Shown here one piece after another: positions 18,566 through 62,871 of a stretch of 64,000 nt of DNA. The position numbers and the translations under genes were made by a program. Position 1 is the first letter of the stretch, and the number at the start of each line of letters is the position of its first letter. Under the pieces are notes generated by a model that searched no databases, was not told the DNA's origin, and was given only the letters and a program-made list of their open reading frames with translations. The DNA is taken from IMG/VR virus record IMGVR_UViG_3300027899_000001, positions 248,001 through 312,000 of that record; one strand, given 5' to 3'.

Positions 18566-18883
18566 TTAAATTTCATCTTCTGGTAAAATCTCTAAATCTT
18601 CTCCTTCAAGAAATGAATAAACATATTCATCTATAAATTGTTTTTGATATTCCGCAGGAGTATTATCAAGAATTGTATTTACAAGGTTATTTACGCCTTC
18701 TCTATTATAAAGTTCTTGTATTAAATAAGCAAATCCTTCATAATAAGTATCAACTTCTATATTATATCTTTTTAATTTTTCTGTAAGATATCTATTTCTA
18801 TTAAAACCTATTTTCATATCTTTAATAGGATCTGAATGTTCTTCAAATTTTTCATATAAAGATTCTTTAATAAGTTTTTTCAT
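18566..18883 (-). CDS. 'ESDPI-leader' family protein
   Basis: N-terminus MKKLIKESLYEKFEEHSDPIKDMKIG. Confidence 0.65.
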   Translation of the reverse strand: MKKLIKESLYEKFEEHSDPIKDMKIGFNRNRYLTEKLKRYNIEVDTYYEGFAYLIQELYNREGVNNLVNTILDNTPAEYQKQFIDEYVYSFLEGEDLEILPEDEI

Positions 18884-18891
18884 ATTAATAT

Positions 18892-19755
18892 TTATTTTTG
18901 ATCATCACCTTCCATAGCTCTAATTTCACGTCTATATTTCTTTTCATGTTCATATTCATACTCATGATAATCTGTAAAATACGGAGGTTTAGAAAGCTGT
19001 CTTCTATAATTTGCGCGGGGTACTATGTCTTTAAATGTAGGCGTTATAGTAAATCTTACTATTCGTGGTAATGTTACATCATCTTTTTTAAAATAATGTC
19101 TAATTAATCGCGGTTTAATTAAAATGGAAGAAAATCCCAAGTTATTAATAATATCTTTAACATATTTACCTAACTTATCAATTTCATTTTTCGGTAAGTT
19201 TTTAATTTTAGGATTATTAAACCAGAAATCTATATATCCATTACGTACATATACTGTAAAAATATAATGATTCTTATCAGCGTTTCCAAATAATTTAACT
19301 AAATCTTTGTATCTTGATTTTAATCCTATGCCCATATCATATATCGCATCATCACTTTCAATAAATTTTTCATCTATATGTTTTTGGGGTTTTATACGTT
19401 TTCCTGTATCTGGGTGTCTTTTAGGATATCCTAATTTTAATAATTTATTTCTTACACCCATATAAATATATGCAAAAGGATTACCAGTATGTCTGTTTTC
19501 CATTTTAGTATAATTCTTAGCGTATTCATCTAATATATTATAATATTTCCAATTAAATGCAGTATTTTCATCTTCAGGAAAAATGATATCATCAGGGATT
19601 TTATCTGTACCTAAAATAACAGTTAAATATTTAAAAAACCAATCTGCAGCGTCATCTTCATCTTTAAATCTACGTTTCGCATAAATTCCTATTCCTAAGT
19701 CATGAATGGGATCCGACTCTTCTATAAATTTTTCGTTAATATATTGTGCTCGCAT
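18892..19755 (-). CDS. 'ESDPI-leader' family protein, two tandem units
   Basis: N-terminal INEKFIEESDPIHDLGIG and internal IDEKFIESDDAIYDMGIG. Confidence 0.7.
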   Translation of the reverse strand: MRAQYINEKFIEESDPIHDLGIGIYAKRRFKDEDDAADWFFKYLTVILGTDKIPDDIIFPEDENTAFNWKYYNILDEYAKNYTKMENRHTGNPFAYIYMGVRNKLLKLGYPKRHPDTGKRIKPQKHIDEKFIESDDAIYDMGIGLKSRYKDLVKLFGNADKNHYIFTVYVRNGYIDFWFNNPKIKNLPKNEIDKLGKYVKDIINNLGFSSILIKPRLIRHYFKKDDVTLPRIVRFTITPTFKDIVPRANYRRQLSKPPYFTDYHEYEYEHEKKYRREIRAMEGDDQK

Positions 19756-19778
19756 TAAAGAGACTTTTATTTATATAT

Positions 19779-19928
19779 TTAATCTTCATAATATATAAAT
19801 TCACGTCCTTCATAGTTTTTTAATTTTACACAATTTCCTTCACGTCCAACGTAATAATCTGGTAACATAGGTATTTTACCACCCGGAGTATCAATAATAA
19901 ACTGAGGAACAAACCTAAATTTTTTCAT
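19779..19928 (-). pseudogene. Stranded 3' end of kamA, present as its own 49-aa ORF
   Basis: Hand-translated MKKFRFVPQFIIDTPGGKIPMLPDYYVGREGNCVKLKNYEGREFIYYED*; matches the canonical KamA C-terminal pattern (VP.F.ID.PGG.KIP..P.Y...L.NYEG). Confidence 0.8.
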
Positions 19929-19939
19929 GAATATATAAA
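19929..19939 (+). promoter_or_regulatory. Putative late promoter motif GAATATATAAA
   Basis: Exact 11-mer 8 nt upstream of the endonuclease ATG at 19947. Confidence 0.5.
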
Positions 19940-19946
19940 ATAAAAA

Positions 19947-20966
19947 ATGAAAGAATTCAAAAAAGAAAAGAATTTATTTATATGTGAAGAATGCCAACGC
20001 ACATTTGTTAAAATCGATGGGTTAAGTAAACATATAAGACTTAATCACTATTCTCAAAAAACATATTATGATAAATGGCTAAAAGAAAATGATGAAAATA
20101 CTTGTAAAATTTGTAAAAAAGAAACAACATTTATAGGATTAGGAAAAGGTTATAAAAATTGTTGTTCATCTGACTGCACTAAAAAATTTAGAACACATAA
20201 AATTCAAGCAACTTTATTACTTAGATATGGTGTAAATTCTCCTACTAAAGATAAAACTATTAGAGAAAAAGTAAATAAAACGATGATAAAAAAATATGGG
20301 CATAAATGCCCTATGAAAAATGAAAAAATACAAAAAGAAATAAAACAAAATAATTTAAAAAAATTGGAAGTAGAATATCCATTTCAGTCTTTAAAAATTC
20401 AAGAAAAAATAATTATATCTAATTTAGAAAATTTCGGAGTAAAAAATACGTTTCAACGAATAGATGTAAAAAATAAAATAAAAGAAACTTGTATGCAAAG
20501 ATATGGAGTTGAAAATCCAAATAATAATAAAAAAGTTAGAGATAAAATAGAAAAAACTTGTATAGATAAATATGGAGTTAAAAATCCATCACAGAATAAA
20601 GAAGTGCATGATAAACAACAAAAAAACGCGTGTTATTCAAAAAAATATAAAAATACTATTATAAACTATAGAGCATCTTATGAATATGATTTTTTAGAAA
20701 AATTTTACCCAGTATATTCTGATATAGTTAATGGCCCAACAATAAAATATCAATATAAAAATGAATCCAGATTATATTTTCCAGATTTTTACATTCCATC
20801 TTTAAATCTTATCGTTGAAATAAAAAATTCTTATCTTTTAAAAAAAGATAAAGAAAAAATAGAAGCAAAGAAAAAATATACTATTCTTAATGGGTATAAT
20901 TATTTAATAATTACTAATAAAGATTATTCTACATTTTCTTCATATCTTAAAATTTCTCCAGTATAA
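19947..20966 (+). mobile_element. Homing-endonuclease-like protein (C2H2 finger, YGV.NP repeats, C-terminal PD-(D/E)xK nuclease)
   Basis: 'FICEECQR...HIRLNH'; repeated 'YGVxNP'; 'YFPDFYIPSLNLIVEIK'. Confidence 0.7.
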
Positions 20967-22099
20967 CTTTTAAATTCATATACATGATCTTTATGCGATA
21001 TAATGTTATCACAGACTTCAATTTTTCCTAAATGAGAATCTACAATAAATGTTGGACACGCGTAACCACTCGTCCAGCCTCTCAATGCTGAGATAATCTG
21101 AAGTCCTTTATTAATAGTAGTTCTAAAATGACTTGTACCTGCAACAAGATCGCATGCATATATATAATATGGTCTAACTCTAATTGTAAGAAGACTATTC
21201 ATAAGCTTTTTCATAATTTGTGGGTCATCGTTAACGCCTTTGAGTAATACTGTTTGAGAACCTAAAGGAATTCCTGCATTCGCAAGCTTTTCACACGCTT
21301 GTTTAACTTCTGAAGTTATTTCATCGGGATGAGAGAAATGAATACTTATGAATAAAGGATGATATTTCTTTAAGATATTAGTTAACTCTGGCGTAATTCT
21401 TTGAGGTAACACAACAGGAACTTTAGTTCCAATTCTTAAGAACTCAACGTGTTTTATTTCTTTAATTTCTTTAAGAAGATATTCTATACTATCGTCATTC
21501 ATAGTTAAAGGATCTCCTCCAGATAATAACACATCTCGTATCTCAGTATGTTCTCTAATATACTGAAGCGCCTTTTCCCACGCTTTCTTAGGAATTCGTT
21601 CTCTATTTATGAGTCTACTTCTTGTACAGTATCGACAATTTGAAGAACAAAAGTCCGTGGTTAGAAATAATACACGATCTGGATATCTATGAACTATACA
21701 TTCCACAGGACTTTGATGTTCTTCGTTCAGCGAGTCGTTTTTCTCATTTTCAGTTACGTGAAGTTCGTTATTGGTTGGAATAACGCACTTTCCGATTCCT
21801 TCTGAAAGAGAAGTGATTGTACTTGCATAATATGGAGTAATTCTTAATGGTAAATTTATATTCTTGGATAATTCATAATTTGAATCTCCAAATATACGAC
21901 TCAATTCTTCATATGTAGTTATACTGTTACGTATCTGCCAATGCCAATCATTCCAATTAGTATCAGATACATCTGAATAAAATCTATTTTTAAAAGATTG
22001 AGTTTTTTCGGAGATGATAAGAGGGGGTTCTTCAGTATCAACGATAATCTCCTGAGCTGGTTGATACTGGTTTTTAGACGAATCTATTTGTTGTTCCAT
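20924..22099 (-). CDS. kamA: KamA-family radical SAM lysine 2,3-aminomutase
   Basis: 'WNDWHWQIRN', 'VHRYPDRVLF...CSSNCRYCTR', 'LLSGGDPL', PLP-Lys 'LLKGVND', 'VRPYY'. Confidence 0.85.
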   Translation of the reverse strand: MEQQIDSSKNQYQPAQEIIVDTEEPPLIISEKTQSFKNRFYSDVSDTNWNDWHWQIRNSITTYEELSRIFGDSNYELSKNINLPLRITPYYASTITSLSEGIGKCVIPTNNELHVTENEKNDSLNEEHQSPVECIVHRYPDRVLFLTTDFCSSNCRYCTRSRLINRERIPKKAWEKALQYIREHTEIRDVLLSGGDPLTMNDDSIEYLLKEIKEIKHVEFLRIGTKVPVVLPQRITPELTNILKKYHPLFISIHFSHPDEITSEVKQACEKLANAGIPLGSQTVLLKGVNDDPQIMKKLMNSLLTIRVRPYYIYACDLVAGTSHFRTTINKGLQIISALRGWTSGYACPTFIVDSHLGKIEVCDNIISHKDHVYEFKSYTGEILRYEENVE

Positions 22100-22179
22100 T
22101 TTGTAGTAAAAAATTTTACTTTTATATTCGTATTTTTAGTTTAGTTTTGTTCTATATATCAAAATTTTTGGGATAAAAA

Positions 22180-22255
22180 GATGGCGTGAACCTGGATCCC
22201 ACCCTGTACCTACGAAGATGATTTTCGTTGTTCTGACATTAAACTACACGCCATC
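22180..22255 (-). ncRNA. tRNA-like element (degenerate T-arm, UCA at the anticodon position)
   Basis: 9-bp closing stem GATGGCGTG/CACGCCATC; D-arm TA-GTTT-AATGTCA-GAAC-A; perfect ACGAA/TTCGT stem with 7-nt loop AATCATC; no GTTCRA T-loop. Confidence 0.45.
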
Positions 22256-22291
22256 CGGATTATGGTTAAATTTAGGGCCCAGCTAACCATC

Positions 22292-22636
22292 TTATTCTGG
22301 TAAGGTCATTTTAAAAAACTCGAAAATGGGATTAACATTTTGTTTAGAATGCATCGAAATGTCATCTAAGGTCCGTAGAGATATCGCGTTCTCTAAAGTA
22401 ATAGAACCATATTCTATCCAAAGACCTATAGAATCTACTTCATCTGGTGCACTGGTTAAAAGATCATCGAAAATACTCGTGACAATTTGTTCAGTCAATG
22501 CTTCGTTTAGTATATAGTTTTCAGGAATTTCAAATTTAGCAGATATTTTTTTAAGGTATTCTGCTTTGCCTTCTTCTATATCAGTATCTCTTTTCATCAA
22601 AGAGATTGATATACTTTTAATTAAGTTTAAATCCAT
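22292..22636 (-). CDS. Hypothetical protein
   Basis: 114 aa ORF. Confidence 0.55.
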   Translation of the reverse strand: MDLNLIKSISISLMKRDTDIEEGKAEYLKKISAKFEIPENYILNEALTEQIVTSIFDDLLTSAPDEVDSIGLWIEYGSITLENAISLRTLDDISMHSKQNVNPIFEFFKMTLPE

Positions 22637-22659
22637 AAACTAATTTTTTTATTATATAT

Positions 22660-22992
22660 TTATGTTTGTCTAATTCTAAATCCTCTTCGTTGTAACATTT
22701 TTTGTAACATCTCAGAATCAAACCAGGGGTTTTCTCCTTTTATTTTACAATATTCATTAATAAACATTTGTATATCATGATGATATTTTTCATTTATATA
22801 ATAAGTATTAGATTTAATTATATCGTTAGGTATTGTAGGAGTTTTTAAAATTTGAGGTAATATTTTTATTATATATTGAAACATTCGTACATCATCAGGA
22901 AAATTTTTCTTGGTGTGAGTTATTCCAATACCCATATCATAAATGGGATCAGATTCTTCTACAAATTTTTCAAATACATATTGCGCTTTCAA
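22660..22992 (-). CDS. 'ESDPI-leader' family protein
   Basis: MKAQYVFEKFVEESDPIYDMGIG (TTG start); its payload resembles unit 1 of 18892-19755. Confidence 0.7.
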   Translation of the reverse strand: MKAQYVFEKFVEESDPIYDMGIGITHTKKNFPDDVRMFQYIIKILPQILKTPTIPNDIIKSNTYYINEKYHHDIQMFINEYCKIKGENPWFDSEMLQKMLQRRGFRIRQT

Positions 22993-23007
22993 ATTTAATT
23001 TATTTTA

Positions 23008-23018
23008 TTTATATATTC
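23008..23018 (-). promoter_or_regulatory. Putative late promoter motif GAATATATAAA
   Basis: Exact 11-mer 16 nt upstream of the start at 22992. Confidence 0.5.
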
Positions 23019-23126: not shown

Positions 23127-23816
23127 TTGGAAATCATGAATCATCAAAAAGTCTATGAATCTATAATTCAGAGAGCAAAATCTGAAAATAGAATTAAACT
23201 TAATAGAAATAATGAAAATTATATTTATTATGAAAATCATCATATTTTGCCCAAATGCTTAGGTGGAAATAATGATAAAGATAATTTGGTTTTATTAACA
23301 GCAAAGGAACATTATGTCTGTCATAAATTACTTACATATATTTATAAAGAAAACGCAAAAATATACGGTGCTTTTTTCTATATGTCATTTAATAAAAAAT
23401 ATGACAAATTTTTATCAGCTCGAGATTATGCTTACGCAATAGAATTAAATACTATCGCACATATTAATAAAAAACAATCGTTAGAAACAAAAGAAAAAAG
23501 AAGAAAATCAATGTTAGGTAAAAACAAAGGAAAAAAAATGAAAAAAGAATTTGGCGAAAACATTTCTAAACGTTTAAAAGGAAACATTCCTTGGAATAAA
23601 GGAAAACCCGGGTGTTTTTCAAATGATACTATTAATAAAATGTCAATAGCTGCAATAGGAGTAAAAAATTCATTAGAATCAAATGAAAAAAATAGGCAAT
23701 CTCATATAGGAAAAACTACATGGAATAAAGGATTAACAAAAGAAATTGATGAACGGGTTTTAAAATGTTCACTTAAAATTTCTAAAACTCTTAAAAATAA
23801 AAATTTATTAAATTAA
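23127..23816 (+). mobile_element. Free-standing HNH homing endonuclease
   Basis: 'YYENHHILPKCLGGNNDKDNLVLLTAKEHYVCHKLL'; paralog of 9287-9934; 'PWNKG' repeats. Confidence 0.8.
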
Positions 23817-24517
23817 GACTGGCCCGGACCCTTTATAGCAATTCCGCTAATTGCAGGGTTGGATCTATCATTAGGTTGCGAAAATTGTTTTACCCTATTC
23901 GCATCAGTTATATCGGCAGCATTTTGCTGAAGACCTATACTCTCTTCAACTTCTCCTTTGGCTGCTACTGCTTTACCATCTGTAACTTTATTAAGTTCTT
24001 CTGGAGCCATTGTTCCAAATCCTGAACGTTCTTCCCAATAATCTTTTCCATAATCAATTGTAAGTTGTTCTCCAGCTTTTATAGTTCTTGCTGCGATAAA
24101 ATACATTTGACGATTATCTTTATTATAAGCAAATGTGATATTTGGTTGAGGTGAATGCCCATATAAACTGCCATATCCAAGCACAATACCGTATTGCATT
24201 TTATTTTTATCGATTTCAAAAATATAATCTTTTAATCTTGGAACTGCTTTTGCTTCAAGACCCACAAAAATAATAGGCGCAATTTCAACTATTTCTCCTT
24301 TAGCATATTGTGTTTTAGCTAACACAAGATATCCTCCATTCTTTTTCTTAGAATATTCTACACGATTAACATTGAACACTTCTTTACGCGCTGTCAAGAA
24401 ACCCCCTTTATCAGCAATATGTGAAGGTTTTACTACGATATCTGTTTTTTCAAACGGATTGTAAAATTCTTCATCTAGTTTAGCAAATTGATCAAATGTT
24501 TTAATTTTATATTTCAT
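23813..24517 (-). CDS. SET-domain protein methyltransferase
   Basis: 'KNGGYLVLAK...KGEIVE', 'GSLYGHSPQPN' (NHS-like), 'AARTIKAGEQLTIDYG'. Confidence 0.8.
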   Translation of the reverse strand: MKYKIKTFDQFAKLDEEFYNPFEKTDIVVKPSHIADKGGFLTARKEVFNVNRVEYSKKKNGGYLVLAKTQYAKGEIVEIAPIIFVGLEAKAVPRLKDYIFEIDKNKMQYGIVLGYGSLYGHSPQPNITFAYNKDNRQMYFIAARTIKAGEQLTIDYGKDYWEERSGFGTMAPEELNKVTDGKAVAAKGEVEESIGLQQNAADITDANRVKQFSQPNDRSNPAISGIAIKGPGQS

Positions 24518-26946: not shown

Positions 26947-26957
26947 GAATATATAAA
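26947..26957 (+). promoter_or_regulatory. Putative late promoter motif GAATATATAAA (divergent pair with the variant at ~26918-26930)
   Basis: Exact 11-mer 17 nt upstream of the ATG at 26974. Confidence 0.5.
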
Positions 26958-26973: not shown

Positions 26974-28281
26974 ATGAAACATGTATATGAATCTTTAAAA
27001 GAATTTAATGATTATAAATTCTTCAAACTTTTAGAAGAAAAAGAAGAACCTGGTACTGATAAGCAAAATCTACAATCTAAAGAAAAAGATGGTTTAGCTA
27101 TTATAGATAAGGTCATAAAGAATTTTGATGACTTTAAAAAAGATGCTAAAGGTGAAATTCTTAAGTATAAAGAATTCTGGGAAGAAAATCAGCAAACTAA
27201 AAAGGCATTTTCTAATGGAGATGTCTATAAAATGTATGATGGTAATTACGTTGTAGGTGTTCTTGAATTACCAGTAGAAACATTATCTGATGGTAGTATA
27301 GAAGGTGGATTAGGAGCAACAGATGAACCAGTAGAAGAGATTATTGAAGGCAAAGAATTAATGGAAGCTACAAAAGAAGAAGACGATTTAGGTCTTGATC
27401 TTGGTTTAACAGATGAACCCATAACAGAACCTAATACTAGTCCTGCTCCAAATGAAGTTCCAGCAGATCCTAATACACAAGAATTAGAAGAGCCTGCTCC
27501 TGATCAATCGGGAAATTCAGGATTAACTGATCAATCTCCAGTAGAAGAACCTCCAATGGATCAAGCACCAGTTGAAGAACCTTCGCCAGATCTTACAGCG
27601 CCCCAAACATATTTAGTAGTATATGACATGTCAGGTGATGATAAAGAAGAAATTTTTAGATGTGGTTCTAATAATGTAGTTCAAGGATTTCAAGCATTCT
27701 ATAATGACACTTTTAAAGGATCAATGAAAAATGCTATATTACAATATAAGAAACAAAAAGAACAAGAAAAAGCTGAAGCTGAAAAAACAGAGAAGAAAAA
27801 AGTTCAAGCTGAAAAACAAACTAAAGTTCAAAAATTCTTAGGTGAAGCTCTTGAAGAAGATATGCCAGAAGATGATGAAATGCAGTCTTGGCTTGATGAA
27901 GTAAGAGATTATCTTATATCTGAATATGAAATTGAAGAAGATGTAGTAGATGATTTCTTAGAATTAGCTTCTGAACAATTAGCTGATTTATTTGATGGAG
28001 GATCAAGTGCATTTGATGCAGCTGGAACAGTTGCTACAGATGAAGATATTTTATCAGAACTTGATAAAGATGATGAAGACGAAGATGATATTGACATAGA
28101 AGATGAAGATGAATTAGATGATGAAGATCTTGAGGATCTTGGTGAAGAAGAAGATGAAGAAGAATATCCTGAAGATGAAGATGATGAAGAAGATGATGAC
28201 GATACACATGAAGAAGAATTAGGAAAAATAATTGGAAGAGATACAATGAGACGTCCATTACGTTTATCAGATGAAGATTAA
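26974..28281 (+). CDS. Highly acidic low-complexity protein
   Basis: 435 aa; Pro/Glu-rich middle, D/E-saturated C-terminus; leader MKHVYESLKEF. Confidence 0.7.
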   Translation: MKHVYESLKEFNDYKFFKLLEEKEEPGTDKQNLQSKEKDGLAIIDKVIKNFDDFKKDAKGEILKYKEFWEENQQTKKAFSNGDVYKMYDGNYVVGVLELPVETLSDGSIEGGLGATDEPVEEIIEGKELMEATKEEDDLGLDLGLTDEPITEPNTSPAPNEVPADPNTQELEEPAPDQSGNSGLTDQSPVEEPPMDQAPVEEPSPDLTAPQTYLVVYDMSGDDKEEIFRCGSNNVVQGFQAFYNDTFKGSMKNAILQYKKQKEQEKAEAEKTEKKKVQAEKQTKVQKFLGEALEEDMPEDDEMQSWLDEVRDYLISEYEIEEDVVDDFLELASEQLADLFDGGSSAFDAAGTVATDEDILSELDKDDEDEDDIDIEDEDELDDEDLEDLGEEEDEEEYPEDEDDEEDDDDTHEEELGKIIGRDTMRRPLRLSDED

Positions 28282-30803: not shown

Positions 30804-31730
30804 ATGGCACGACCTAAAAAAGTAAAAGTAGAAGAACCTGCTAAAATAGCAGTAGAAGAAAAAGAAACTCTAAATGATATTATAATTGAAAAAAGTAACA
30901 TTTATCCATTAGGAGAAATACAGATTGTAGATAATCCGGTGTTTGAAGTTCCATATTTGGAATTTAATTATAATAAAGAGTCTGACACCATTTCTCTAGA
31001 AAAACAAAAACAAACAATACAAGTTAGCACTTCTAGAGTAGGCACGCATATAACTTCAGAACAAGCTAAAGAATTTAAAGATAAATTTAATTTAGACTTA
31101 AACGAAGTTGTTAAAAAAGCATTGATAAATGAAGCTTCTCAACAATTAACAAAACATTATATATCAAAAATTGGAGAAGCTGCTACAGAAAATTATATTA
31201 AAGAATATACCCGTTGGGATAAGTTTAAAGTATGGGCATATAAACTTGTTAAAAAACAATATAGAAAAAAAATAAAAATTCAAACTTCTAAAGAGTTAAA
31301 TTATAGAATTTTAAAAGAAGCCAATAATATTGCAGCAAATAGTAGATGGGGAAGTGGAAATTTTGTTATATGTAGTTTAAAAACTGCTATGCTTTTACAG
31401 AGTTCATCTAATTTTGTATATGCTACTTTAAATAAACCTGTATCTACAAATGGCAGTATTTATCCAATTGGAACTATTGCAGGCGTGACTATTTATGTAG
31501 ATCCTTATATGTTATATCAAGATACTAATGTATACATAGGAAGAAGAAATAATACAAATCAGCCTGGCATAAAACTATTTTTTAAAGAATCTTATAGTTA
31601 TATGCAAACGGAAGGTCTTGGTGCTCCAAAGGTTATATTAGAAATGAGATACGCAATCGCAGGCGTTGGTAAAAATTATAAAGACCAATATAGAAAATTT
31701 GAATACATTGATAAAATCATAAACAAATGA
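30804..31730 (+). CDS. Truncated paralog of the major capsid protein
   Basis: 'NGSIYPIGTIAGVTIYVDPYMLYQDTNVYIGR...TEGLGAPKVILEMRYA' aligns with 'NGSLYPLGTIAGMTLYVDPNMLYSDTRVLVGR...TEGTGAPKVIIKTRYA' in 56803-58575. Confidence 0.8.
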   Translation: MARPKKVKVEEPAKIAVEEKETLNDIIIEKSNIYPLGEIQIVDNPVFEVPYLEFNYNKESDTISLEKQKQTIQVSTSRVGTHITSEQAKEFKDKFNLDLNEVVKKALINEASQQLTKHYISKIGEAATENYIKEYTRWDKFKVWAYKLVKKQYRKKIKIQTSKELNYRILKEANNIAANSRWGSGNFVICSLKTAMLLQSSSNFVYATLNKPVSTNGSIYPIGTIAGVTIYVDPYMLYQDTNVYIGRRNNTNQPGIKLFFKESYSYMQTEGLGAPKVILEMRYAIAGVGKNYKDQYRKFEYIDKIINK

Positions 31731-56272: not shown

Positions 56273-56710
56273 TTAAACTGCTGAAACTATAAGACCATCT
56301 ACTATATTAAACACCGAAGCATCTCCAAAATTTATTGATCCAGTAAGACCCGCAGGTGCTGTCCCTTGAACGCCTTGAATACCTTGTATTCCTTGTGCAC
56401 CTTGATCACCAGTTATGCCCTGAATTGCTTGAATTCCTTGTACTCCTTGAGCACCCGTTATTCCTTGAATACCTTGAATACCTTGAGCTCCAGTTATGCC
56501 CTGAATTGCTTGAATTCCTTGTACTCCTTGAGCACCTGTTATTCCTTGAATACCTTGAATACCTTGAGCTCCTTGTGAACCTGTTATTCCTTGTAATCCC
56601 TGAGTACCTTGAATACCAGTTATTCCTTGTGCGCCTTGAGCCATTACATATCCATCTAATAGTGTGCTAACATCTCTAGTTAAATCAGCATTAGTTTTTT
56701 CACGTATCAT
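56273..56710 (-). CDS. Collagen-like (G-X-Q/T) protein, probable head/virion fibre component
   Basis: About 30 Gly-X-Y triplets; directly downstream of the MCP with its own late-promoter motif. Confidence 0.75.
56409..56570 (-). repeat. Tandem 81-bp duplication within the collagen tract
   Basis: 56409-56489 vs 56490-56570, one mismatch by eye (CCCGT/CCTGT). Confidence 0.85.
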
Positions 56711-56739: not shown

Positions 56740-56750
56740 TTTATATATTC
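56740..56750 (-). promoter_or_regulatory. Putative late promoter motif GAATATATAAA
   Basis: Exact 11-mer 30 nt upstream of the ATG at 56710. Confidence 0.5.
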
Positions 56751-56802: not shown

Positions 56803-58575
56803 TTAAATAACTGAACCACTATTAGTTTCAAACCAAAGTGTAATATATTGAGTTTCTGGGTGGAAACCTGCGTCAACTAAAGCGTATCTAGTTTTGATGA
56901 TAACTTTAGGAGCACCTGTACCTTCAGTAATAAGCTTAACGCTTTCAGCCATAAGGTATGGGCAGAATACTGTTCCTGGTTCATCAATAGCACCTTTTCT
57001 TCCTACAAGTACTCTGGTATCAGAATAAAGCATGTTAGGATCTACATAAAGAGTCATTCCAGCGATTGTTCCGAGAGGATACAATGAACCGTTAGATTGA
57101 GTAAATGTATTGGTTATAGGTGAGAATGTGTAACCAGCATTTGTTTGAAGAGCTGTAGCAATTTTAAGGTTAGTAACAATAAAGTTAGCAGGACCTCTTC
57201 TTCCTCTTTGCATGATAACGTTACCAGCTGCAAGAATATTAGCCATAACTCTTTTGATAATTGTGTCTTGGTTTTCAAATGTTGCACCAACTACTGATGT
57301 ATATTTTGCGAATCCTGGAACAGTCATTGCTCCTGTAGTAACAGAACCAGCATCATTATATGCAAATGCAGTTGAATTAAGAGAACCTGTAGATGTACAG
57401 TTCATGTTAAGGTTAATACCTTCAACAGCGTTAGCTTTGATATGGTTTTTCCAACCGTGACCGAACAATCTTGAAAGAATGTGTTTGTTAATAGCTTGGC
57501 TAATTTCGTTGATTCCAGCATTTTCTACCATTGCGATAACATCAATACCCCATTGTTTATTAAGATCTTGAATTTGTTCCTGAGTAACAGAAACTGATAC
57601 TTGGAATGTGCCTACTTGTACAAATTTAGTAAATACCTGAAGACCAAGAGCTCTTGGATATTCCATTTCACCAACGCCTCTTTCCATAGGTTCATAAAGA
57701 GTAGTGCCTGAGACGAATGTTCCTCCCCAGTCAGCATTATCTGTTTGACCTGCACCGGTAAATCCTTGTACTTGATCTTCCAATGTGGAAATAAGTGTAG
57801 GATAAGTAGTAACATTATAAAGTAATGATTGATTTAATAGAGGAGCGACGTTTCCTGTACCATTGAAAATATCAGCCAAATTATCACCTGCTGTTCCAAA
57901 TGTTCCAGTTTTAAACATTGGGAAACCATCAATTCTTGATTTTCCAATATAAGTAGCTGTTAATGTAGAAGCACCTGTAGATACGTTTGTTGCTGAGTTA
58001 AATATTAAAGATGTTCCATTAGTAATTGTTCCTGCTGTAATAAGAGCTTGAACAGATGCATCAAGTTGAATTTTGAATGCATGAGGAGCATCGTATTGAC
58101 CATAAGCAGCAGAACCTTGGAAAGTAGCAGGATTTGCTGTTGCAGGACTAACTGCTGGTTGTGCGCCAAATGGTTGTTTTCCTCCAGCGTATACATAATC
58201 TAAATAGGATACAACTCCTGTTGGACCTGGCATAGGAACCACGTTAACAAGGTCAAAACCTATTGTTCTAGCGGCTACTTGAAGAGCCATAGGAAGAAGT
58301 GCAGGCCATTTGTCACCTGAACCTTTAACAGTTGTACCTGTAAATTGAGCTCCTGTAGTAGCTGCAACTGATGCAGGAACTGCAGTACCAACACCTGGTA
58401 CGTTGTAAAGAGTTGCATAAGGAACGGATACACCACCCATAGCAGCTTCATTTAATGCATGAAAATGTGCGTATTTAGAAATCCAACTCAATCTGTTTTT
58501 ATCTTTAAGACCAGTTACAGTTTCAATCATTGGAGACCATTTTTGCACAATTTGTTGTTCGTTTAATTGTTTCAT
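56803..58575 (-). CDS. gp23: Major capsid protein, T4 gp23-like
   Basis: 'KWSPMIE', 'DLVNV.PM.GPTG', 'EQIQDL...GID', 'NEI...IN', 'GTIAG', 'TRYAL'; downstream of the protease/scaffold gene. Confidence 0.9.
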   Translation of the reverse strand: MKQLNEQQIVQKWSPMIETVTGLKDKNRLSWISKYAHFHALNEAAMGGVSVPYATLYNVPGVGTAVPASVAATTGAQFTGTTVKGSGDKWPALLPMALQVAARTIGFDLVNVVPMPGPTGVVSYLDYVYAGGKQPFGAQPAVSPATANPATFQGSAAYGQYDAPHAFKIQLDASVQALITAGTITNGTSLIFNSATNVSTGASTLTATYIGKSRIDGFPMFKTGTFGTAGDNLADIFNGTGNVAPLLNQSLLYNVTTYPTLISTLEDQVQGFTGAGQTDNADWGGTFVSGTTLYEPMERGVGEMEYPRALGLQVFTKFVQVGTFQVSVSVTQEQIQDLNKQWGIDVIAMVENAGINEISQAINKHILSRLFGHGWKNHIKANAVEGINLNMNCTSTGSLNSTAFAYNDAGSVTTGAMTVPGFAKYTSVVGATFENQDTIIKRVMANILAAGNVIMQRGRRGPANFIVTNLKIATALQTNAGYTFSPITNTFTQSNGSLYPLGTIAGMTLYVDPNMLYSDTRVLVGRKGAIDEPGTVFCPYLMAESVKLITEGTGAPKVIIKTRYALVDAGFHPETQYITLWFETNSGSVI

Positions 58576-58657
58576 TTTTATTTCGTTATTTTATTTTTTA
58601 AATTTGTTTTATTTATTTTTATATAAACTGTTGTTTTTTATACTTAGTGCACTAAAA

Positions 58658-61003
58658 TTAGTTATTATAACGATTTTTCATATAATCACCAATGGACGCA
58701 ACATAAGTATCTAATTTTTGTTCACTTTCTTCTGGAGTTTTTGCGATGACAGACTCATTAAGAGTAAGATTAGGTTTAGTAATTAATCCGCTAGTTTCCC
58801 AGAAATTTTCGATCTGATACTGTGTATTCAATGTAAAGTATTCAGCTTTTGCATTAATCGTTTCTCTAATTACTTCTGAAGAGTTATAAAGATCTTTATA
58901 AGCTTTAGGAGCTAATGCTAACCATAAAGGTTCATTAGTTTGATTTTTTGCAACTGCATTTTCCCATAATTGCATAATTACTTTAGAATCAGTTGTTGGA
59001 ACTTTTGAAATTTCGTTTGCTACTTTTTCTTTATCAGTTGCGTCTAGACCAGCAAATCTTTTTCTATCAGTTTCACTTAAAAGCTGAGTGAATGGATATT
59101 GCTCTTTTACACTTTCATCTAATCCTTTTTCTTTTTCTAAAGATTGAATAATTGCTTCAAGTTTACTATCAAGATTTGTTTTTCTAGCTTGAATATCAGA
59201 AGTTTGATTTAAGCTTTCGTTTGTTAATCCTTTTCCGCCAGGTTTAACATTTAATTTAAGATTTTGTGCACTAGTATAGTTCTTTTTAGGACCATCACCA
59301 GATACACTTTCTTTTCCTTTTCCTATAGTTTTAACAACTTTAAGATCAGTTTTAAGATCTTTTGGATCATTGCAACAACCCCCATCTTTTGGAAGTGATG
59401 CACCTGCTTTAGAAGGATTCATTTGTAATTTATCGTTTCCAACAGGCATTTTTTCTTTACCAACTTTAACGTTTCTTAATTTTGCTGTAATAATTTTACC
59501 ATCAAATTCTACGCTAGTGTTTTTCTGATGTGCGGTATCAACTTTCACATTGCCAGCTTTCTTAAGAGTATCTGCTGTAATAACTGATATTCCTTTAAGA
59601 TTTGCTTCGTTAAGTGGTTTTGCTGTAATTGAATGTGTTTTTAGCATTTCGTCGATTTTTGATTTTAGTTCTGGACTTTTCTTTGATTCTGAAACTAATT
59701 CAACGTATTCAATAAGTTTCATGGCATCTTCTTTACTTATAGCTCTGCCAAACATATCTTCTGTCCAGTTTACAGAATGATTAAGATTTTTAGCAATGGA
59801 TGAAGTCCATTCATGCATGCCGTTAATAGCTTGGGCTTTTTCTGTACCCCATTCGTTAAGTGCATTAACACCTTTTGCGATTTGAGTTGTCCACTCATTA
59901 AGACCATCAAGCATTTCTGCGTTATGATCTACAGTTTCTCCAATTGCATTTGTGACCTTTGCTACTTCTGCAGTCCAGTCTTGGGTTGCATTTAGAGTTT
60001 TAGCATTATGATCTACAGTATCTGCAATCTTCTTAGTTAGTTTATAGTGATTATTGCTCTTTTCTGCTAATGTATCAGCATAAGTAGCGAGTTCATTTAC
60101 AGCTTTAGCGATTTCGGATTGCCAATTTAATGAATCTTCTTGGATTTTACGTATTTTTTCAACATATTTTTCCAATTTTCCTGATTTATCAGGAGAGTCA
60201 TTTGAATTTTCTAGTTTTTCCTTAATGGCGCCAAGCTCTTGATTGAATAATTCGGTCCATTTCTGGATAGCTTCTTCATTCATCATTGGTTTTGTTTCTG
60301 CCATTTGATTTTCGTGATTATTTTTAATTAATTGTTTTGCTTCTTCACGTAGTGGAACTGATGGATATTTATCAGTAACATCAATAATAGAGATGTCTTC
60401 ATTTAAAATACCGAGCTTAGAATTGATACTATGATCTTTACGTGTTGAAGAGGATTCGTTAAGTTGTTTTACTAATTCATTAATATAGGCTTGTTTTGGA
60501 TTGGCACCTTCATTAACTTTGTGAAGCTGTGCAGACTCGAAACCTGGTTTGGCAACCAAGTCATATGTGTAAATCTGCTGTATAGCTACTGTTTTGTCTT
60601 CGTTAACCGTACCAGCGGCTCTTGAAGAGATTGAAAGTGGAACTCCTGCTTCTAATAATGATTTAGCAATTTGCCCCTTCGGTGTTTCGAGTACTTCAAT
60701 ACGACCTAAAACTTGACGTTTTTGTTGATCATACCACAACTCAGATATTCTATGAGATACACCACCTAATGCAACTTCAAATCTTTCAGGATGATCTAAT
60801 TCACCAAGAAGGTTACCATTAGTAATGTCTTTCTTCAAATATTCTAAGTGGGGTAAATACTCTTTTTCTTCGTAAATACGACCATTTCTATTTTCAACTC
60901 CAAACTCAGCAAAAACACCTTCTAACATAGTCTTACCGTTTTTGGTAATTTTCTGTAGGTTTTGAGATGATCTTTCAAGGATCAAAAGTGATTTTTCTGC
61001 CAT
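58658..61003 (-). CDS. gp21: Prohead protease (gp21-like) fused to a coiled-coil scaffold
   Basis: 'LEGVF....N.NGRIY', 'LGELDHP', 'VSHRI', 'TPKG.I...L..G..L.ISSRAAG', 'TYD.VA.PG' in the first ~190 aa, followed by a long helical repeat region. Confidence 0.85.
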   Translation of the reverse strand: MAEKSLLILERSSQNLQKITKNGKTMLEGVFAEFGVENRNGRIYEEKEYLPHLEYLKKDITNGNLLGELDHPERFEVALGGVSHRISELWYDQQKRQVLGRIEVLETPKGQIAKSLLEAGVPLSISSRAAGTVNEDKTVAIQQIYTYDLVAKPGFESAQLHKVNEGANPKQAYINELVKQLNESSSTRKDHSINSKLGILNEDISIIDVTDKYPSVPLREEAKQLIKNNHENQMAETKPMMNEEAIQKWTELFNQELGAIKEKLENSNDSPDKSGKLEKYVEKIRKIQEDSLNWQSEIAKAVNELATYADTLAEKSNNHYKLTKKIADTVDHNAKTLNATQDWTAEVAKVTNAIGETVDHNAEMLDGLNEWTTQIAKGVNALNEWGTEKAQAINGMHEWTSSIAKNLNHSVNWTEDMFGRAISKEDAMKLIEYVELVSESKKSPELKSKIDEMLKTHSITAKPLNEANLKGISVITADTLKKAGNVKVDTAHQKNTSVEFDGKIITAKLRNVKVGKEKMPVGNDKLQMNPSKAGASLPKDGGCCNDPKDLKTDLKVVKTIGKGKESVSGDGPKKNYTSAQNLKLNVKPGGKGLTNESLNQTSDIQARKTNLDSKLEAIIQSLEKEKGLDESVKEQYPFTQLLSETDRKRFAGLDATDKEKVANEISKVPTTDSKVIMQLWENAVAKNQTNEPLWLALAPKAYKDLYNSSEVIRETINAKAEYFTLNTQYQIENFWETSGLITKPNLTLNESVIAKTPEESEQKLDTYVASIGDYMKNRYNN

Positions 61004-61232
61004 AATTTTCTTTATTTTATGTTAGTTTGAATTTTATACAATATTCTATTTATATATACAGATCTTAAGTGATTAAAAATAAGGTTAATGCATATACTTT
61101 TAAGACATTGTTAAATTCTTAAAAATATGGAGCATTAATATATTAGAAACAAACAAATTAAAGATACGTGTGATGTTAATGATATGTTAAAAAGAACTTA
61201 AAATTTCTATATCTCAATAATTTTTATTATAT

Positions 61233-61697
61233 TTGTATATAAAATATATAAAAATGCAAACATTTCTTCCGTATGATAATTTAGAAAAATCGGTAAAAGC
61301 TTTAGATAATAAAAGACTTGGAAAACAACGCGTCGAATGTTATCAGCTTATAAGCGTGATATCAGGCAGACCGAGAAAAGATGGAAAACCTTATAAAGGT
61401 TGGACTAATCACCCTATAACAGTGATGTGGAGAAATCACCTAAATGCATTAAAATTATACTATAATCTATGTATTGATGAATGGATAAAACGAGGATTTA
61501 AAAATACTATGGAAAAAGAAAAAATAGAAGGGCCTATAGTTTATCCTGAATGGTTTGGTTATATACCTTTTCACGCATCACATCGTTCTAATTTACTTAG
61601 AAAAGATAAAAGTTATTATTCTAAACTTGGATGGAGCGATTCGGCTGATTGGGCGTATTTATGGTTTGATAACGAAAGAGGCTGGCATTCTACTTAA
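61233..61697 (+). CDS. Pyrimidine-dimer DNA glycosylase / endonuclease V family (likely start 61254)
   Basis: 'MQTFLPY', 'LD.KRLGKQRVE', 'W.NHP', 'EW..RG', 'H.SHR.NLL.K'. Confidence 0.8.
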   Translation: MYIKYIKMQTFLPYDNLEKSVKALDNKRLGKQRVECYQLISVISGRPRKDGKPYKGWTNHPITVMWRNHLNALKLYYNLCIDEWIKRGFKNTMEKEKIEGPIVYPEWFGYIPFHASHRSNLLRKDKSYYSKLGWSDSADWAYLWFDNERGWHST

Positions 61698-62515
61698 TCT
61701 GTCTGTATTTCTCCGTTTACAGCACAAACCTTTTTAACATCTCTCCTTGAAAAATTTTTATAATTACCATGACAATAAAAACTTGCGCCTACATATTTAG
61801 GAGCAAATTCAAGAGATTTTAGTCTATTATTACTACAAGAAAATAATCCTGTTACAAATACAGGACATCCTCTTAAAGAAGTGAGATGATTATTTTGTAA
61901 AGTAAACATCCCTTGTATTTTATTAAATTGTATGTAAGAAGGAAATTCTGTAAGACCTTTCCATTTTAATATTACATTTTCATTAACATCAATGGTTAAA
62001 TCATCATTTATAGTATAATGTTTAATTTCATACTCATCTAACCATTTTTTTATTTTGATTTTAAATCCTATACCCATATCATAAATAGGATCTGATTCTT
62101 CTGTAAAAGCCTCTGATATAGTATTTTTATTAAGTTCGCTTTCTTTAAAAACTTTAAAATATTTTTTCCAACGTGAAATTGACGCAGTATTTGTTGCTTG
62201 AGAATATGTTCTTTCTTTTCCATTTAATATATTCTTTCTTATATCTAAAAATATTGGATTAATAGTGTATCCATAAGGAACAAGATTTAATTGTAATTCA
62301 TTTTTTGATAAATGTTTTATGTGATATACTATGTATAAACCAGTAGCGGGAAATGGCGTCTTATCATTAAATGCAAAATATTTACTTTCTTTAAGACATC
62401 TAAGAACATCTCCTACTTCAAGATTTTCAAAACCCTTATAACCTATTCCCATATCTTTAATAGGATCAAACTCTTCAGTAAATTTTTCGTTAATATGTTC
62501 TCTAATCAATTTCAT
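61694..62515 (-). CDS. 'ESDPI-leader' family protein, two units; the second carries LRR-like repeats
   Basis: INEKFTEEFDPIKDMGIG; internal ISEAFTEESDPIYDMGIG; 'NNHLTSLRGCP..V.G.FSCSNNRLKSLEFAP'. Confidence 0.7.
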   Translation of the reverse strand: MKLIREHINEKFTEEFDPIKDMGIGYKGFENLEVGDVLRCLKESKYFAFNDKTPFPATGLYIVYHIKHLSKNELQLNLVPYGYTINPIFLDIRKNILNGKERTYSQATNTASISRWKKYFKVFKESELNKNTISEAFTEESDPIYDMGIGFKIKIKKWLDEYEIKHYTINDDLTIDVNENVILKWKGLTEFPSYIQFNKIQGMFTLQNNHLTSLRGCPVFVTGLFSCSNNRLKSLEFAPKYVGASFYCHGNYKNFSRRDVKKVCAVNGEIQTD

Positions 62516-62871
62516 TAATCTTTAATGATGTATTTTTCTGTTGGAATTATATGATATGTAAGAGTAGTTATTCCTTTTCCTTTTACATTTATTAATCCGT
62601 CTCTATTCATAATTATTTCATCGACAAGAACTTCACAATGTTTTCGTGTAGAGGAGTATTTTCCAGCTTCATATAGATCCATTATTCCAGATATTCGTTT
62701 TCCATGAAATTGATATACAAATTTTACCCATTTTTGCCATACTAGATTTTCAAAATCTTTGTATATAGAAAAATATTTATCTTCAAATACTATATATCCT
62801 ATACCTAAATCATGTATTGGATCTGACTCTTCAGTAAATTTTTCGTATAATTTCTCCTTTAATTTTTTCAC
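62515..62871 (-). CDS. 'ESDPI-leader' family protein
   Basis: LYEKFTEESDPIHDLGIG. Confidence 0.7.
   Translation of the reverse strand: MKKLKEKLYEKFTEESDPIHDLGIGYIVFEDKYFSIYKDFENLVWQKWVKFVYQFHGKRISGIMDLYEAGKYSSTRKHCEVLVDEIIMNRDGLINVKGKGITTLTYHIIPTEKYIIKD

What the first reader, a model, noticed from the sequence alone, without database searches (positions are those of the whole stretch)
18566..62871. Seven-copy 'E-K-F-x-E-E-S-D-P-I-x-D-[ML]-G-I-G' module on variable payloads, twice as internal polyprotein junctions
Seen in five ORFs at three loci (18566, 18892 x2, 22660, 61694 x2, 62515). Codons vary synonymously (gaa/gag, tca/tct/tcg, cct/ccc/cca, ggt/gga/ggc), so conservation is at the peptide level and not a DNA repeat. 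The motif directly follows an (I/L/V)xE site. What comes after it differs: an LRR-like domain, unknown domains, and one payload shared by 18892 unit 1 and 22660. In two ORFs it recurs mid-protein behind 'HIDE' and 'TISE'. Inference: a modular effector-delivery system in which the prohead protease cuts at Glu, also splits the polyproteins, and exposes a constant ~15-aa peptide (capsid-wall, portal or ejection tag) on a rapidly diversifying set of injected proteins. I do not recognise it as a named family.
Basis: partly seen in the sequence, partly recalled or inferred. Interest (0 to 1): 0.82.

Follow-up and report, generated by a model that had tools for sequence, protein, structure and literature searches.

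The report
Conserved cargo tag of huge phages
A freshwater huge phage related to the Lak megaphages attaches one unstructured 25-residue tag, unknown to protein-family databases, to dozens of small, very different proteins, and the tag looks like a capsid-loading and protease-cutting signal, though no experiment has tested this.

Summary
All seven copies sit where stated (7 observed, 0 in 200 shuffles). Codon usage shows the selection acts on the peptide.

**Scale.** The window belongs to a 405-kb freshwater phage whose capsid protein is 48% identical to that of Lak megaphages. The 158 kb of that contig held here carry at least 51 modules, plus two more in the window. A profile finds 1,658 protein clusters in metagenomes, with up to 10 modules per protein. 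Cellular genomes essentially lack it. Pfam, PHROGs, NCBIfam, the PDB and 50,697 deposited phage records do not contain it.

**Module.** The consensus is MKLVREHINE-KFTEDSDPIxD[ML]GIG. AlphaFold2 predicts it disordered next to confidently folded payloads: two novel folds, an LRR-like solenoid and ankyrin repeats.

**Capsid-cargo reading (about 0.45).**
- The first ten residues resemble the T4 capsid-targeting sequence.
- The [ILV]-[N/Y]-E tripeptide matches the conserved capsid-protein maturation site.
- That tripeptide is eight-fold enriched in the gp21-like protease-scaffold protein.
- Payloads are small and basic, like T4 internal proteins.

**Against.**
- The best-conserved part lies after the predicted cut.
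- Proximity to the protease gene is not conserved in relatives.
- No virion or cleavage data exist.

The parts
62797..62871 (-). N-terminal module of ORF 62515-62871 (MKKLKEKLYE|KFTEESDPIHDLGIG)
62515..62796 (-). Payload of ORF 62515-62871 (93 aa); small family with few relatives
62441..62515 (-). N-terminal module of ORF 61694-62515 (MKLIREHINE|KFTEEFDPIKDMGIG)
62141..62440 (-). Payload unit 1 of ORF 61694-62515 (100 aa); orphan with no relative among 250 payload units
62066..62140 (-). Internal module of ORF 61694-62515 (..NTISE|AFTEESDPIYDMGIG); predicted disordered (pLDDT 44-65)
61694..62065 (-). Payload unit 2 of ORF 61694-62515: LRR-like beta-solenoid (pLDDT 96-99), one of the three largest payload families
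22924..22992 (-). N-terminal module of ORF 22660-22992 (M/L-KAQYVFE|KFVEESDPIYDMGIG; TTG start); predicted coil, block-mean pLDDT 51-74
22660..22923 (-). Payload family A (about 90 aa alpha/beta domain, pLDDT above 90, no PDB fold match)
19687..19755 (-). N-terminal module of ORF 18892-19755 (MRAQYINE|KFIEESDPIHDLGIG)
19399..19686 (-). Payload unit 1 of ORF 18892-19755; family A, homologous to the payload of 22660
19324..19398 (-). Internal module of ORF 18892-19755 (..KHIDE|KFIESDDAIYDMGIG)
18892..19323 (-). Payload unit 2 of ORF 18892-19755 (143 aa); family of 8, which elsewhere occurs as stand-alone single-module genes and as the last unit of a 7-module protein
18806..18883 (-). N-terminal module of ORF 18566-18883 (MKKLIKESLYE|KFEEHSDPIKDMKIG)
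18566..18805 (-). Payload of ORF 18566-18883 (79 aa); orphan
58658..61003 (-). Prohead protease (Peptidase_S77, T4 gp21 family; aa 19-137) fused to a roughly 600-aa scaffold-like extension. It carries 10 [ILV]NE tripeptides (1.23 expected). Candidate processing enzyme and docking partner.
56803..58575 (-). Major capsid protein (Gp23 family; 48% identical to Lak megaphage MCP). Candidate docking partner.
58441..58452 (-). Putative MCP maturation site ALNE|AAMGG (aa 42-45), conserved in 11 of 11 homologues as AL[N/Y]E and positioned like the LTE|AEIGG site of T4 gp23
17844..18251 (-). Leader-only protein (MKKLVYESLNE|F...) with the propeptide-like leader but no DPIxDMGIG tag; conserved in L070
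26974..28281 (+). Leader-only protein (MKHVYESLKE|F...), 435 aa; conserved in L070 and L010 with the same leader

Best explanation
The module is a disordered, two-part tag that marks proteins as capsid cargo. This mechanism is inferred, not shown.

Part 1 is M-K-L-V-[KR]-E-H-[ILV]-[N/Y]-E at N-termini and [ILV]-K-E-S-[ILV]-N-E inside proteins. It is a T4-type propeptide that ends in the cleavage site of the phage's gp21-family prohead protease.

Part 2 is K-F-T-E-[DE]-S-D-P-I-x-D-[ML]-G-I-G. It would stay on the payload and act as the docking peptide that holds each unit inside the prohead, on the scaffold or on the inner capsid wall. Its hydrophobic-Gly-hydrophobic-Gly core is the same kind of motif that encapsulin cargo peptides use to bind an HK97-fold shell.

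Single-unit genes and concatenated polyproteins of 2 to 10 units would be loaded into the prohead and cut after each Glu into units of about 120 aa. These mostly basic units would travel with the DNA into the next host, where the variable domains (ankyrin, LRR-like, novel folds) would bind host targets.

Shown here: the module's anatomy, its disorder, peptide-level selection, restriction to phages, payload diversity, and the protease-site statistics. Inferred: cleavage, packaging, docking partner and delivery.
For: 1. The module is separate from the payload folds. It has low pLDDT and is coil in two AF2 models whose payloads score 90-99. It is attached to unrelated folds, including Pfam ankyrin repeats and DUF6267.
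2. It resembles the T4 capsid-targeting sequence. The T4 sequence is MKTYQEFIAE, is removed by gp21 after L/I-x-E, and has its processing determinants at residues 8 and 10 (PMC8442874; PMC9026906). The N-terminal consensus here is MKLVREHINE, sharing M1, K2, E6, I8 and E10. Position 8 is aliphatic in 93% and position 10 is Glu in 94% of 240 N-terminal copies.
3. An S77/gp21-family protease is encoded in the window.
4. [ILV]-[N/Y]-E looks like this clade's cleavage site. The capsid protein has HAL[N/Y]E|A in 11 of 11 homologues at the position of the T4 gp23 site. The protease-scaffold protein has 10 [ILV]NE tripeptides against 1.23 expected (P = 7e-7), and homologues carry 9-13, many positionally conserved.
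5. Internal modules are as conserved as N-terminal ones (385 copies, Glu in 96%). The same payload families occur both as stand-alone genes and as internal units. Unit spacing is tight, with a median of 122 aa.
6. Payloads are small and basic: median pI 8.8, with 65% above pI 8 against 27% of other ORFs. T4 internal proteins are likewise small and basic.
7. Leader-only proteins show that the propeptide part also exists on its own.
8. The module is phage-specific. Only 2 true copies were found among 185,579 species genomes, both on short contigs of metagenome-assembled genomes.
9. Encapsulin targeting peptides bind the shell through two hydrophobic residues separated by Gly (native DLGI, consensus SLGIGSL; PMC7925596). 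The module core is D[ML]GIG.
Against: - There are no proteomic, biochemical or structural data for any member.
- The most conserved residues (F, S, DPI, D, [ML]GIG) lie after the predicted cut, whereas in T4 the conserved targeting part lies before it.
- The position of locus 3 next to the protease gene is not conserved in 13 related phages.
- A 10-module gene sits among replication and nucleotide-metabolism genes.
- About 5% of canonical modules lack the Glu, as do 2 of 4 divergent modules in L130.
- At least 53 modules per genome is far more cargo diversity than in T4.
- Some payloads (ankyrin arrays, the 376-aa DUF6267) are large for passage through a tail.
- [ILV]xE is a short motif in a proteome rich in Ile, Asn and Glu.
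- The match to encapsulin peptides covers only 4-5 residues.
Confidence: 0.45

Rival explanations
1. The module is a docking peptide for a common partner unrelated to the capsid. It would recruit a host or phage hub protein (protease, chaperone, polymerase or similar), and the variable ankyrin, LRR-like or novel domains would bring different targets to that hub. This is an adaptor family, comparable to F-box proteins of eukaryotes and their viruses.
For: The module is a disordered, invariant linear motif on interchangeable protein-binding scaffolds, including ankyrin and LRR-like domains. The strongest conservation lies outside the putative cleavage site. The genes are scattered through the genome among non-structural genes. 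Two divergent modules lack the Glu site but keep DPxxx[ML]GIG.
Against: Seven to ten copies of a docking peptide in one chain are hard to explain for an adaptor. The [ILV]-[N/Y]-E tripeptide is conserved in 94-96% of copies and matches the clade's capsid-protein and scaffold sites. The N-terminal decapeptide resembles the T4 capsid-targeting sequence. No candidate partner has been identified.
Confidence: 0.25
2. The proteins are external capsid decoration or cement proteins. The conserved peptide would anchor variable domains, or strings of them, to periodic sites on the outside of the capsid lattice, as Hoc does in T4.
For: A short capsid-binding peptide carrying variable display domains is a known design. 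Regular unit spacing in multi-module chains could match lattice periodicity.
Against: Payloads are mostly basic. Dozens of different genes per genome would compete for the same site. The Glu-site statistics and the T4-leader likeness are left unexplained. No Ig-like or other typical decoration folds were seen.
Confidence: 0.08
3. It is an ordinary repeated domain: the motif is simply the best-conserved N-terminal strand or helix of one divergent domain family of about 120 aa, with no separate function.
For: Unit length is regular, about 100-140 aa. Single-linkage clustering chains 135 of 250 payloads together.
Against: With stricter thresholds the payloads split into three main families plus many singletons. 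They include ankyrin repeats, an LRR-like solenoid and an unrelated alpha/beta fold. AF2 gives the module low confidence with no packing, despite a deep alignment.
Confidence: 0.05
4. It is a leader for secretion or peptide maturation (double-glycine or RiPP-type leader, or another export signal), or a DNA-level recombination cassette.
For: A conserved leader followed by a hypervariable remainder, present in many copies per genome, superficially resembles RiPP precursor families. A radical-SAM (KamA-like) gene lies between loci 1 and 2.
Against: Payloads are folded domains of 85-145 aa or more, not short core peptides. The module has no hydrophobic signal segment and no GG, GA or GS cleavage pair. 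The hydrophobic spacing of double-glycine leaders, checked by eye against a consensus recalled from memory, does not fit. Codon usage excludes DNA-level conservation. The KamA gene is conserved in L070 independently of the neighbouring motif genes.
Confidence: 0.04

Closest known systems
T4 capsid-targeting sequence and internal proteins (IPI, IPII, IPIII, Alt)
   Same: A short N-terminal leader of about 10 residues ends in hydrophobic-x-Glu. A gp21-family protease is encoded by the same genome. Payloads are small, basic, highly diverse and non-homologous, sharing only the leader. The genes lie in variable genome regions (PMC3012670, PMC9026906, PMC8442874).
   Different: An extra invariant 15-residue peptide follows the predicted cut. 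The module also recurs inside proteins, up to 10 times. There are at least 53 modules per genome against four cargo proteins in T4. Payloads include ankyrin and LRR-like domains. Packaging and cleavage are unproven here.
Encapsulin cargo-loading (targeting) peptides
   Same: Both are disordered terminal peptides on otherwise unrelated cargo. The core consists of two hydrophobic residues separated by Gly (native DLGI, consensus SLGIGSL) and binds a pocket on the inside of an HK97-fold shell (PMC7925596). The module core is D[ML]GIG.
   Different: Encapsulin peptides are usually C-terminal, belong to cellular compartments and are not linked to a protease site. The resemblance covers only 4-5 residues.
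Proteolytically processed head and ejection proteins of giant phages (phiKZ, 201phi2-1, SPN3US)
   Same: Large phages with many head-internal proteins that are cut after Glu by a diverged gp21 homologue. Propeptides carry redundant cleavage sites (PMC9026906; PMC5694885 and PMC7411985 abstracts).
   Different: Those proteins share no common conserved tag, and their motif is S/A-x-E. This phage has a T4/Lak-type capsid protein, not a phiKZ-type one.
Viral polyproteins with repeated protease junctions
   Same: Tandem units are separated by a conserved sequence containing a candidate cleavage site. The same units also occur as separate genes.
   Different: No tailed-phage example came up in the papers read here. 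The conserved junction spans about 22 residues, much longer than a typical cleavage site.

Membership tests
T4-type capsid-targeting sequence / internal-protein system | N-terminal propeptide of about 10-19 residues ending in L/I-x-E | tested here: met
   In the commonest of the 240 N-terminal copies (16 residues before DPI) residue 8 is aliphatic in 93% and residue 10 is Glu in 94%. The consensus MKLVREHINE compares with T4 MKTYQEFIAE.
T4-type capsid-targeting sequence / internal-protein system | gp21-family (Peptidase S77) prohead protease encoded in the same genome | tested here: met
   ORF 58658-61003 matches PF03420 at E 2.4e-15 and phrog_207 at E 6e-40.
T4-type capsid-targeting sequence / internal-protein system | Conservation confined to the removed propeptide, with the mature parts unrelated | tested here: not met
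   The payloads are unrelated, but the most conserved 15 residues (KF..DPIxD[ML]GIG) lie after the predicted cut.
T4-type capsid-targeting sequence / internal-protein system | [quoted passage not shown] | not testable with these tools
   This needs virion proteomics or biochemistry. No cultured relative exists and no RNA run was listed.
T4-type capsid-targeting sequence / internal-protein system | Small, basic mature proteins | tested here: met
   Unit size is about 100-140 aa. Median payload pI is 8.8, with 65% above 8 against 27% of other ORFs.
Encapsulin cargo-loading peptide | Terminal disordered peptide with a hydrophobic-Gly-hydrophobic core | tested here: met
   The D[ML]GIG core is invariant by the search pattern. 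AF2 predicts the module mostly as coil at low pLDDT, with one short helical turn at DPIY in the second model.
Encapsulin cargo-loading peptide | Binds a pocket on the interior face of the HK97-fold shell protein | not testable with these tools
Encapsulin cargo-loading peptide | Cargo gene in an operon with the shell gene | tested here: not met
   Module genes are scattered from 60 to 387 kb of the 405-kb contig. Adjacency to the protease and capsid genes is not conserved in 13 relatives.
Any curated protein family or solved structure (Pfam, PHROGs, NCBIfam, PDB sequences) | Significant profile or sequence match covering the module | tested here: not met
   There was no hit above noise in Pfam or PHROGs at E <= 1 or in NCBIfam at E <= 0.1. 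The module profile had no PDB match at E <= 10.
Leucine-rich repeat proteins (payload of 61694 unit 2 only) | Solenoid of short Leu-rich repeats recognised by LRR profiles or by fold | tested here: inconclusive
   AF2 gives a periodic beta-solenoid with pLDDT 96-99. The top Foldseek PDB hits are LRR domains, but with E 0.4-0.6. No Pfam LRR family matched.
Double-glycine / RiPP leader peptides | Leader ending in GG, GA or GS before a short core peptide, with a dedicated peptidase or modifying enzyme | tested here: not met
   The module ends in G-I-G and is followed by folded domains of 85 aa or more. The hydrophobic spacing of such leaders, compared by eye with a consensus recalled from memory, does not fit.

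The most novel reading that the evidence does not exclude
A true tailed phage uses an encapsulin-style cargo-loading peptide. After the prohead protease cuts at [ILV]-N-E, each unit keeps the KF..DPIxD[ML]GIG peptide, which docks it onto the inner face of a capsid-protein subunit. The thousands of subunits of a huge capsid could then carry an arsenal of 50 or more different polyprotein-derived effectors (ankyrin, LRR-like, novel folds) for delivery into the host.
Probability: 0.2. Interest if true: 0.85.

Novelty: new variant of a known kind. Interest (0 to 1): 0.7.

Why it matters
Huge phages are uncultured, and most of their genes are unexplained. This single tag accounts for dozens of genes per genome and 1,658 protein clusters worldwide.

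If the tag is a capsid-loading and processing signal, three things follow:
- It would identify, from sequence alone, the set of proteins these phages inject, which are likely anti-defence and host-takeover factors.
- It would extend the T4 capsid-targeting principle to polyprotein cargo, and possibly link phage capsids to encapsulin cargo loading.
- It would give a short portable peptide for loading foreign proteins into large capsids.

If the tag instead docks onto a host hub protein, it would reveal a phage adaptor family of unusual size.

Tried and rejected
- **Family and sequence searches.** Pfam, PHROGs and NCBIfam scans of all five proteins found only noise. tblastn of a whole motif protein and of a 30-aa module against 50,697 deposited phage records, including the Lak genomes, found no match even at E <= 10. 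The module profile found nothing in PDB sequences. ESM Atlas hits scored below 0.8 and were all 'hypothetical protein'. Full-text searches for the motif strings and for DUF6267 returned nothing relevant.
- **Fold searches.** Foldseek of payload A against the PDB, and of the two-unit model against the PDB and BFVD, gave nothing significant.
- **ORF 26974-28281.** I tested whether it is a gp24-like vertex protein carrying a cleavable leader. It is not capsid-protein-like. The capsid-protein paralogue is ORF 30804-31730 and has no such leader.
- **Gene neighbourhood.** Adjacency of motif genes to the protease gene was rejected as evidence because the slot is variable in 13 relatives.
- **Shared promoter.** The GAATATATAAA box precedes motif genes and the protease gene but not the capsid gene, and it also precedes unrelated genes. 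It gives no timing information.
- **Expression data.** No RNA run was listed. The one DNA run only confirmed the assembly.
- **First homologue search.** A single-sequence search found only the query itself. The alignment query worked.


Full report
**1. Observation**

ORF listing and a six-frame regular-expression scan find the motif seven times, all on the minus strand. The five ORFs are 18566-18883, 18892-19755 (N-terminal and internal copy), 22660-22992, 61694-62515 (N-terminal and internal copy) and 62515-62871.

The 9-residue core alone occurs 7 times, against 0 in 200 shuffles of the window. Every copy is preceded by an [ILV]-x-Glu tripeptide. The 61694-62515 and 62515-62871 proteins recur letter for letter in separately deposited assemblies, and locus 1/2, with the two-module ORF 18892-19755, lies in one Logan contig with no differences. 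These records may come from the same sample.

Across 52 distinct module DNAs from this one genome, codons at conserved residues follow genome-wide usage (same-codon fraction 0.644 against 0.635 expected).

**2. What the genome is**

The window has 27.6% G+C. It encodes a Gp23-family major capsid protein (56803-58575). Directly upstream on the same strand it encodes a Peptidase_S77 (T4 gp21 family) prohead protease fused to a scaffold-like extension of about 600 aa (58658-61003).

The capsid protein is 48% identical to that of the Prevotella Lak megaphages. The window is part of a 405-kb IMG/VR contig and a 378-kb ENA contig. A freshwater metagenome run holds it. This is a Lak-related huge phage from fresh water.

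**3. How big the family is**

- A DNA pattern for DPIxDMGIG hits 106 stretches of IMG/VR, concentrated on a few dozen contigs.
- In the 158 kb of the 405-kb contig held here there are 51 modules, plus two more in the window. They are scattered from 60 to 387 kb. Variants with DPV or other substitutions add further copies.
- A 32-column profile of 92 modules finds 1,658 proteins at E <= 1e-3 among 1.84 billion cluster representatives. Of these, 699 score E <= 1e-10, and one protein has up to 10 modules.
- All hits are metagenomic 'hypothetical proteins'.
- Among 185,579 bacterial and archaeal species genomes, only two true modules exist. Both are on short, low-GC contigs of metagenome-assembled genomes and are probably mis-binned phage DNA.
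- Nothing matched in Pfam, PHROGs, NCBIfam, PDB sequences, 50,697 deposited phage records (which include the Lak genomes) or the literature.

**4. Anatomy**

The conserved unit is about 25 residues:
- At N-termini (240 copies): M-K-L-V-[KR]-E-H-I-N-E-K-F-T-E-[DE]-S-D-P-I-x-D-[ML]-G-I-G, with a shorter MRAKF-I-N-E variant.
- Inside proteins (385 copies): [ILV]-K-E-S-[ILV]-N-E-K-F-T-E-D-S-D-P-I-x-D-[ML]-G-I-G.

The Glu before K-F is present in 94-96% of copies. The residue two before it is aliphatic in over 90%, and the residue between them is Asn (57-69%) or Tyr.

Of 180 complete ORFs in the fetched loci, 137 have one module at the extreme N-terminus and 43 have 2 to 7. Module spacing is tight (median 122 aa, mostly 100-140).

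Payloads fall into three large families plus many small families and orphans. The same payload family occurs as a stand-alone gene and as an internal unit of multi-module proteins. Longer members carry ankyrin repeats or DUF6267.

AlphaFold2 was run with deep alignments on two proteins:
- For 22660-22992, residues 1-25 are coil (10-residue block means 60, 51 and 74) and the payload scores above 90.
- For 61694-62515, the internal module scores 44-65 and the adjacent LRR-like solenoid 96-99.

The module is therefore a disordered linear motif, not part of a folded domain.

**5. Link to the prohead protease**

According to the literature:
- T4 internal proteins share only a roughly 10-residue capsid-targeting sequence, MKTYQEFIAE. 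It directs them into the prohead core and is then removed.
- T4 gp21 cuts after L/I-x-E.
- The processing determinants of the targeting sequence are residues 8 and 10.
- The internal proteins are small, basic and diverse anti-restriction factors.

These points come from PMC8442874, PMC9026906 and PMC3012670.

The comparison with this phage gives four results:
- The N-terminal decapeptide consensus, MKLVREHINE, shares M1, K2, E6, I8 and E10 with the T4 sequence.
- The capsid protein carries HAL-N-E|A-A-M-G-G at residues 42-45. It sits in a propeptide whose start aligns by eye with that of T4 gp23, upstream of the block that BLAST aligns (T4 residue 93 to window residue 91). From memory, T4 gp23 is cut after E65, in LTE|AEIGG, a sequence read here from the T4 record. 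The site is AL[N/Y]E in all 11 capsid-protein homologues.
- The tripeptide [ILV]NE occurs 39 times in the 19,214 residues of window ORFs. Ten of these are in the protease-scaffold protein (1.23 expected, Poisson P = 7e-7). Homologues have 9-13 each, many positionally conserved although only 37% of alignment columns are invariant.
- Payloads are basic (median pI 8.8), while the module is acidic (net charge about -2.8).

Two conserved proteins (17844-18251 and 26974-28281) and several in related loci carry only the leader, MK.[LV].ESL.E[FY]. The propeptide-like part therefore exists independently of the DPIxD[ML]GIG part.

**6. What speaks against the capsid-cargo reading, or limits it**

- The best-conserved residues lie after the predicted cut, unlike in T4.
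- In 13 related phages the order metallophosphatase, variable slot, protease, capsid protein is conserved, but the slot holds no motif genes. The adjacency of locus 3 to the protease gene is therefore not evidence.
- One relative (L130) has four divergent modules downstream of its capsid gene, and two of them lack the Glu.
- A 10-module gene lies among replication genes.
- The promoter-like box shared by motif genes and the protease gene also precedes unrelated genes and is absent from the capsid gene.
- No RNA run was listed.
- No virion or cleavage data exist for any member.

**7. Mechanism proposed**

The tag has two parts: a propeptide with a protease site, and a retained docking peptide. 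Single units or polyproteins would enter the prohead, be cut after each [ILV]-[N/Y]-Glu, and leave with the DNA.

The retained peptide's core, D[ML]GIG, has the same hydrophobic-Gly-hydrophobic pattern through which encapsulin targeting peptides bind the inner face of an HK97-fold shell (native DLGI, consensus SLGIGSL; PMC7925596). With one site per capsid subunit, a huge capsid could hold dozens of cargo species. This step is a lead from a short resemblance, not a result.

I put the overall capsid-cargo reading at about 0.45. Rivals:
- A docking motif for a non-capsid partner (adaptor family): 0.25.
- External decoration proteins: 0.08.
- One divergent domain family: 0.05.
- A secretion or RiPP leader, or a DNA cassette: 0.04.

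**8. Diversification**

Between the conserved SET-domain gene and the homologue of 22292-22636, gene content differs by phage:
- The window has one motif gene plus an HNH endonuclease gene.
- L070 has two motif genes with different payloads.
- L010, where only the SET-gene flank is held before the locus ends, has a leader-only gene plus a motif gene.

Between the KamA-like gene and the homologue of 17844-18251, the window has three more genes, two of them motif genes, that L070 lacks. Homing-endonuclease genes are frequent neighbours. The family turns over quickly in variable genome regions, as the T-even internal-protein loci do.

**9. Verdict**

The feature is real and is a large, previously unnamed family. 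The modular, peptide-level, non-domain nature of the motif is shown. Cleavage and delivery remain inferred, with new statistical support and some counter-evidence.

By its likely working it is a new variant of the T4 capsid-targeting principle. It fails one defining feature of that system, because conservation is not confined to the removed propeptide, so it should not simply be filed as a T4-type targeting sequence.

Noticed in passing
window 5340-5350(-), 18264-18274(-), 19929-19939(+), 23008-23018(-), 26947-26957(+), 56740-56750(-), 62891-62901(-): There is a promoter-like box, GAATATATAAA(A/T)AAA, 10-30 nt upstream of start codons. All seven exact copies precede a gene on that gene's strand. 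With one mismatch allowed there are 29 matches against 15.7 expected (0 of 100 shuffles reach 29). It precedes three motif genes, both leader-only genes and the protease gene, but not the capsid gene. Several copies contain a TATAAATA core like the T4 late promoter (that consensus is recalled from memory).
   Followed up: partly
window 30804-31730 (+): A 308-aa paralogue of the C-terminal half of the major capsid protein (30% identity over 269 aa). It lies next to a DNA alpha-glucosyltransferase-like gene, far from the head genes, and is conserved in L010 and L056. It may be a vertex protein or a capsid-derived protein with another role.
   Followed up: partly
window about 59753-60139 (-), aa 289-417 of ORF 58658-61003: The scaffold-like extension of the prohead protease contains four or five repeats of a W-[TSQ]-x-[EQS]-[IV]-A-K-x-[VL]-N motif, each near an [ILV]NE or MHE site. 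These could be periodic docking or cleavage units.
   Followed up: no
window 19947-20966 (+), 23127-23816 (+), 9287-9934 (-): Homing-endonuclease-like genes (an HNH gene and a zinc-finger-plus-nuclease type) sit beside motif genes. Their homologues recur in 17-19 other motif-bearing loci, which marks these as highly variable regions.
   Followed up: partly
window 29558-56270 (+): A long plus-strand block of sugar-modification genes: DNA alpha-glucosyltransferase-like, NDP-hexose 2,3-dehydratase, C-methyltransferase and glycosyltransferases. A cytosine-5 DNA methylase lies at 15811-17022. Together they suggest heavily modified DNA or glycan synthesis.
   Followed up: no
window 23813-24517 (-) and 20924-22099 (-): A SET-domain protein (PF00856, E 1e-11). 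A lysine-2,3-aminomutase-like radical-SAM protein, assigned by reading its sequence only and not scanned against Pfam. Both are conserved at 67-73% identity in related phages (L070, L010). Both are unusual phage genes.
   Followed up: no
L130:11057-12964 (+): Four tandem genes just downstream of the capsid gene of a related phage carry a divergent module (for example MRAKFIRGQDPKDQMGIG). Two of them lack the Glu site. This suggests that DPxxx[ML]GIG is the oldest core of the tag.
   Followed up: partly
L108:10001-13612 (+): A 1,203-aa protein with 10 modules, the record holder of the profile search, lies among DnaB, helicase, SMC-like and nucleotide-metabolism genes on a 140-kb contig.
   Followed up: partly
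window 56273-56710 (-): A small gene directly downstream of the capsid gene. Small genes in the same position in relatives share an N-terminal ..EKTN..L..DV.. motif (seen by eye; BLAST matched only L127, over 18 aa). It could be a decoration or head-accessory protein.
   Followed up: no
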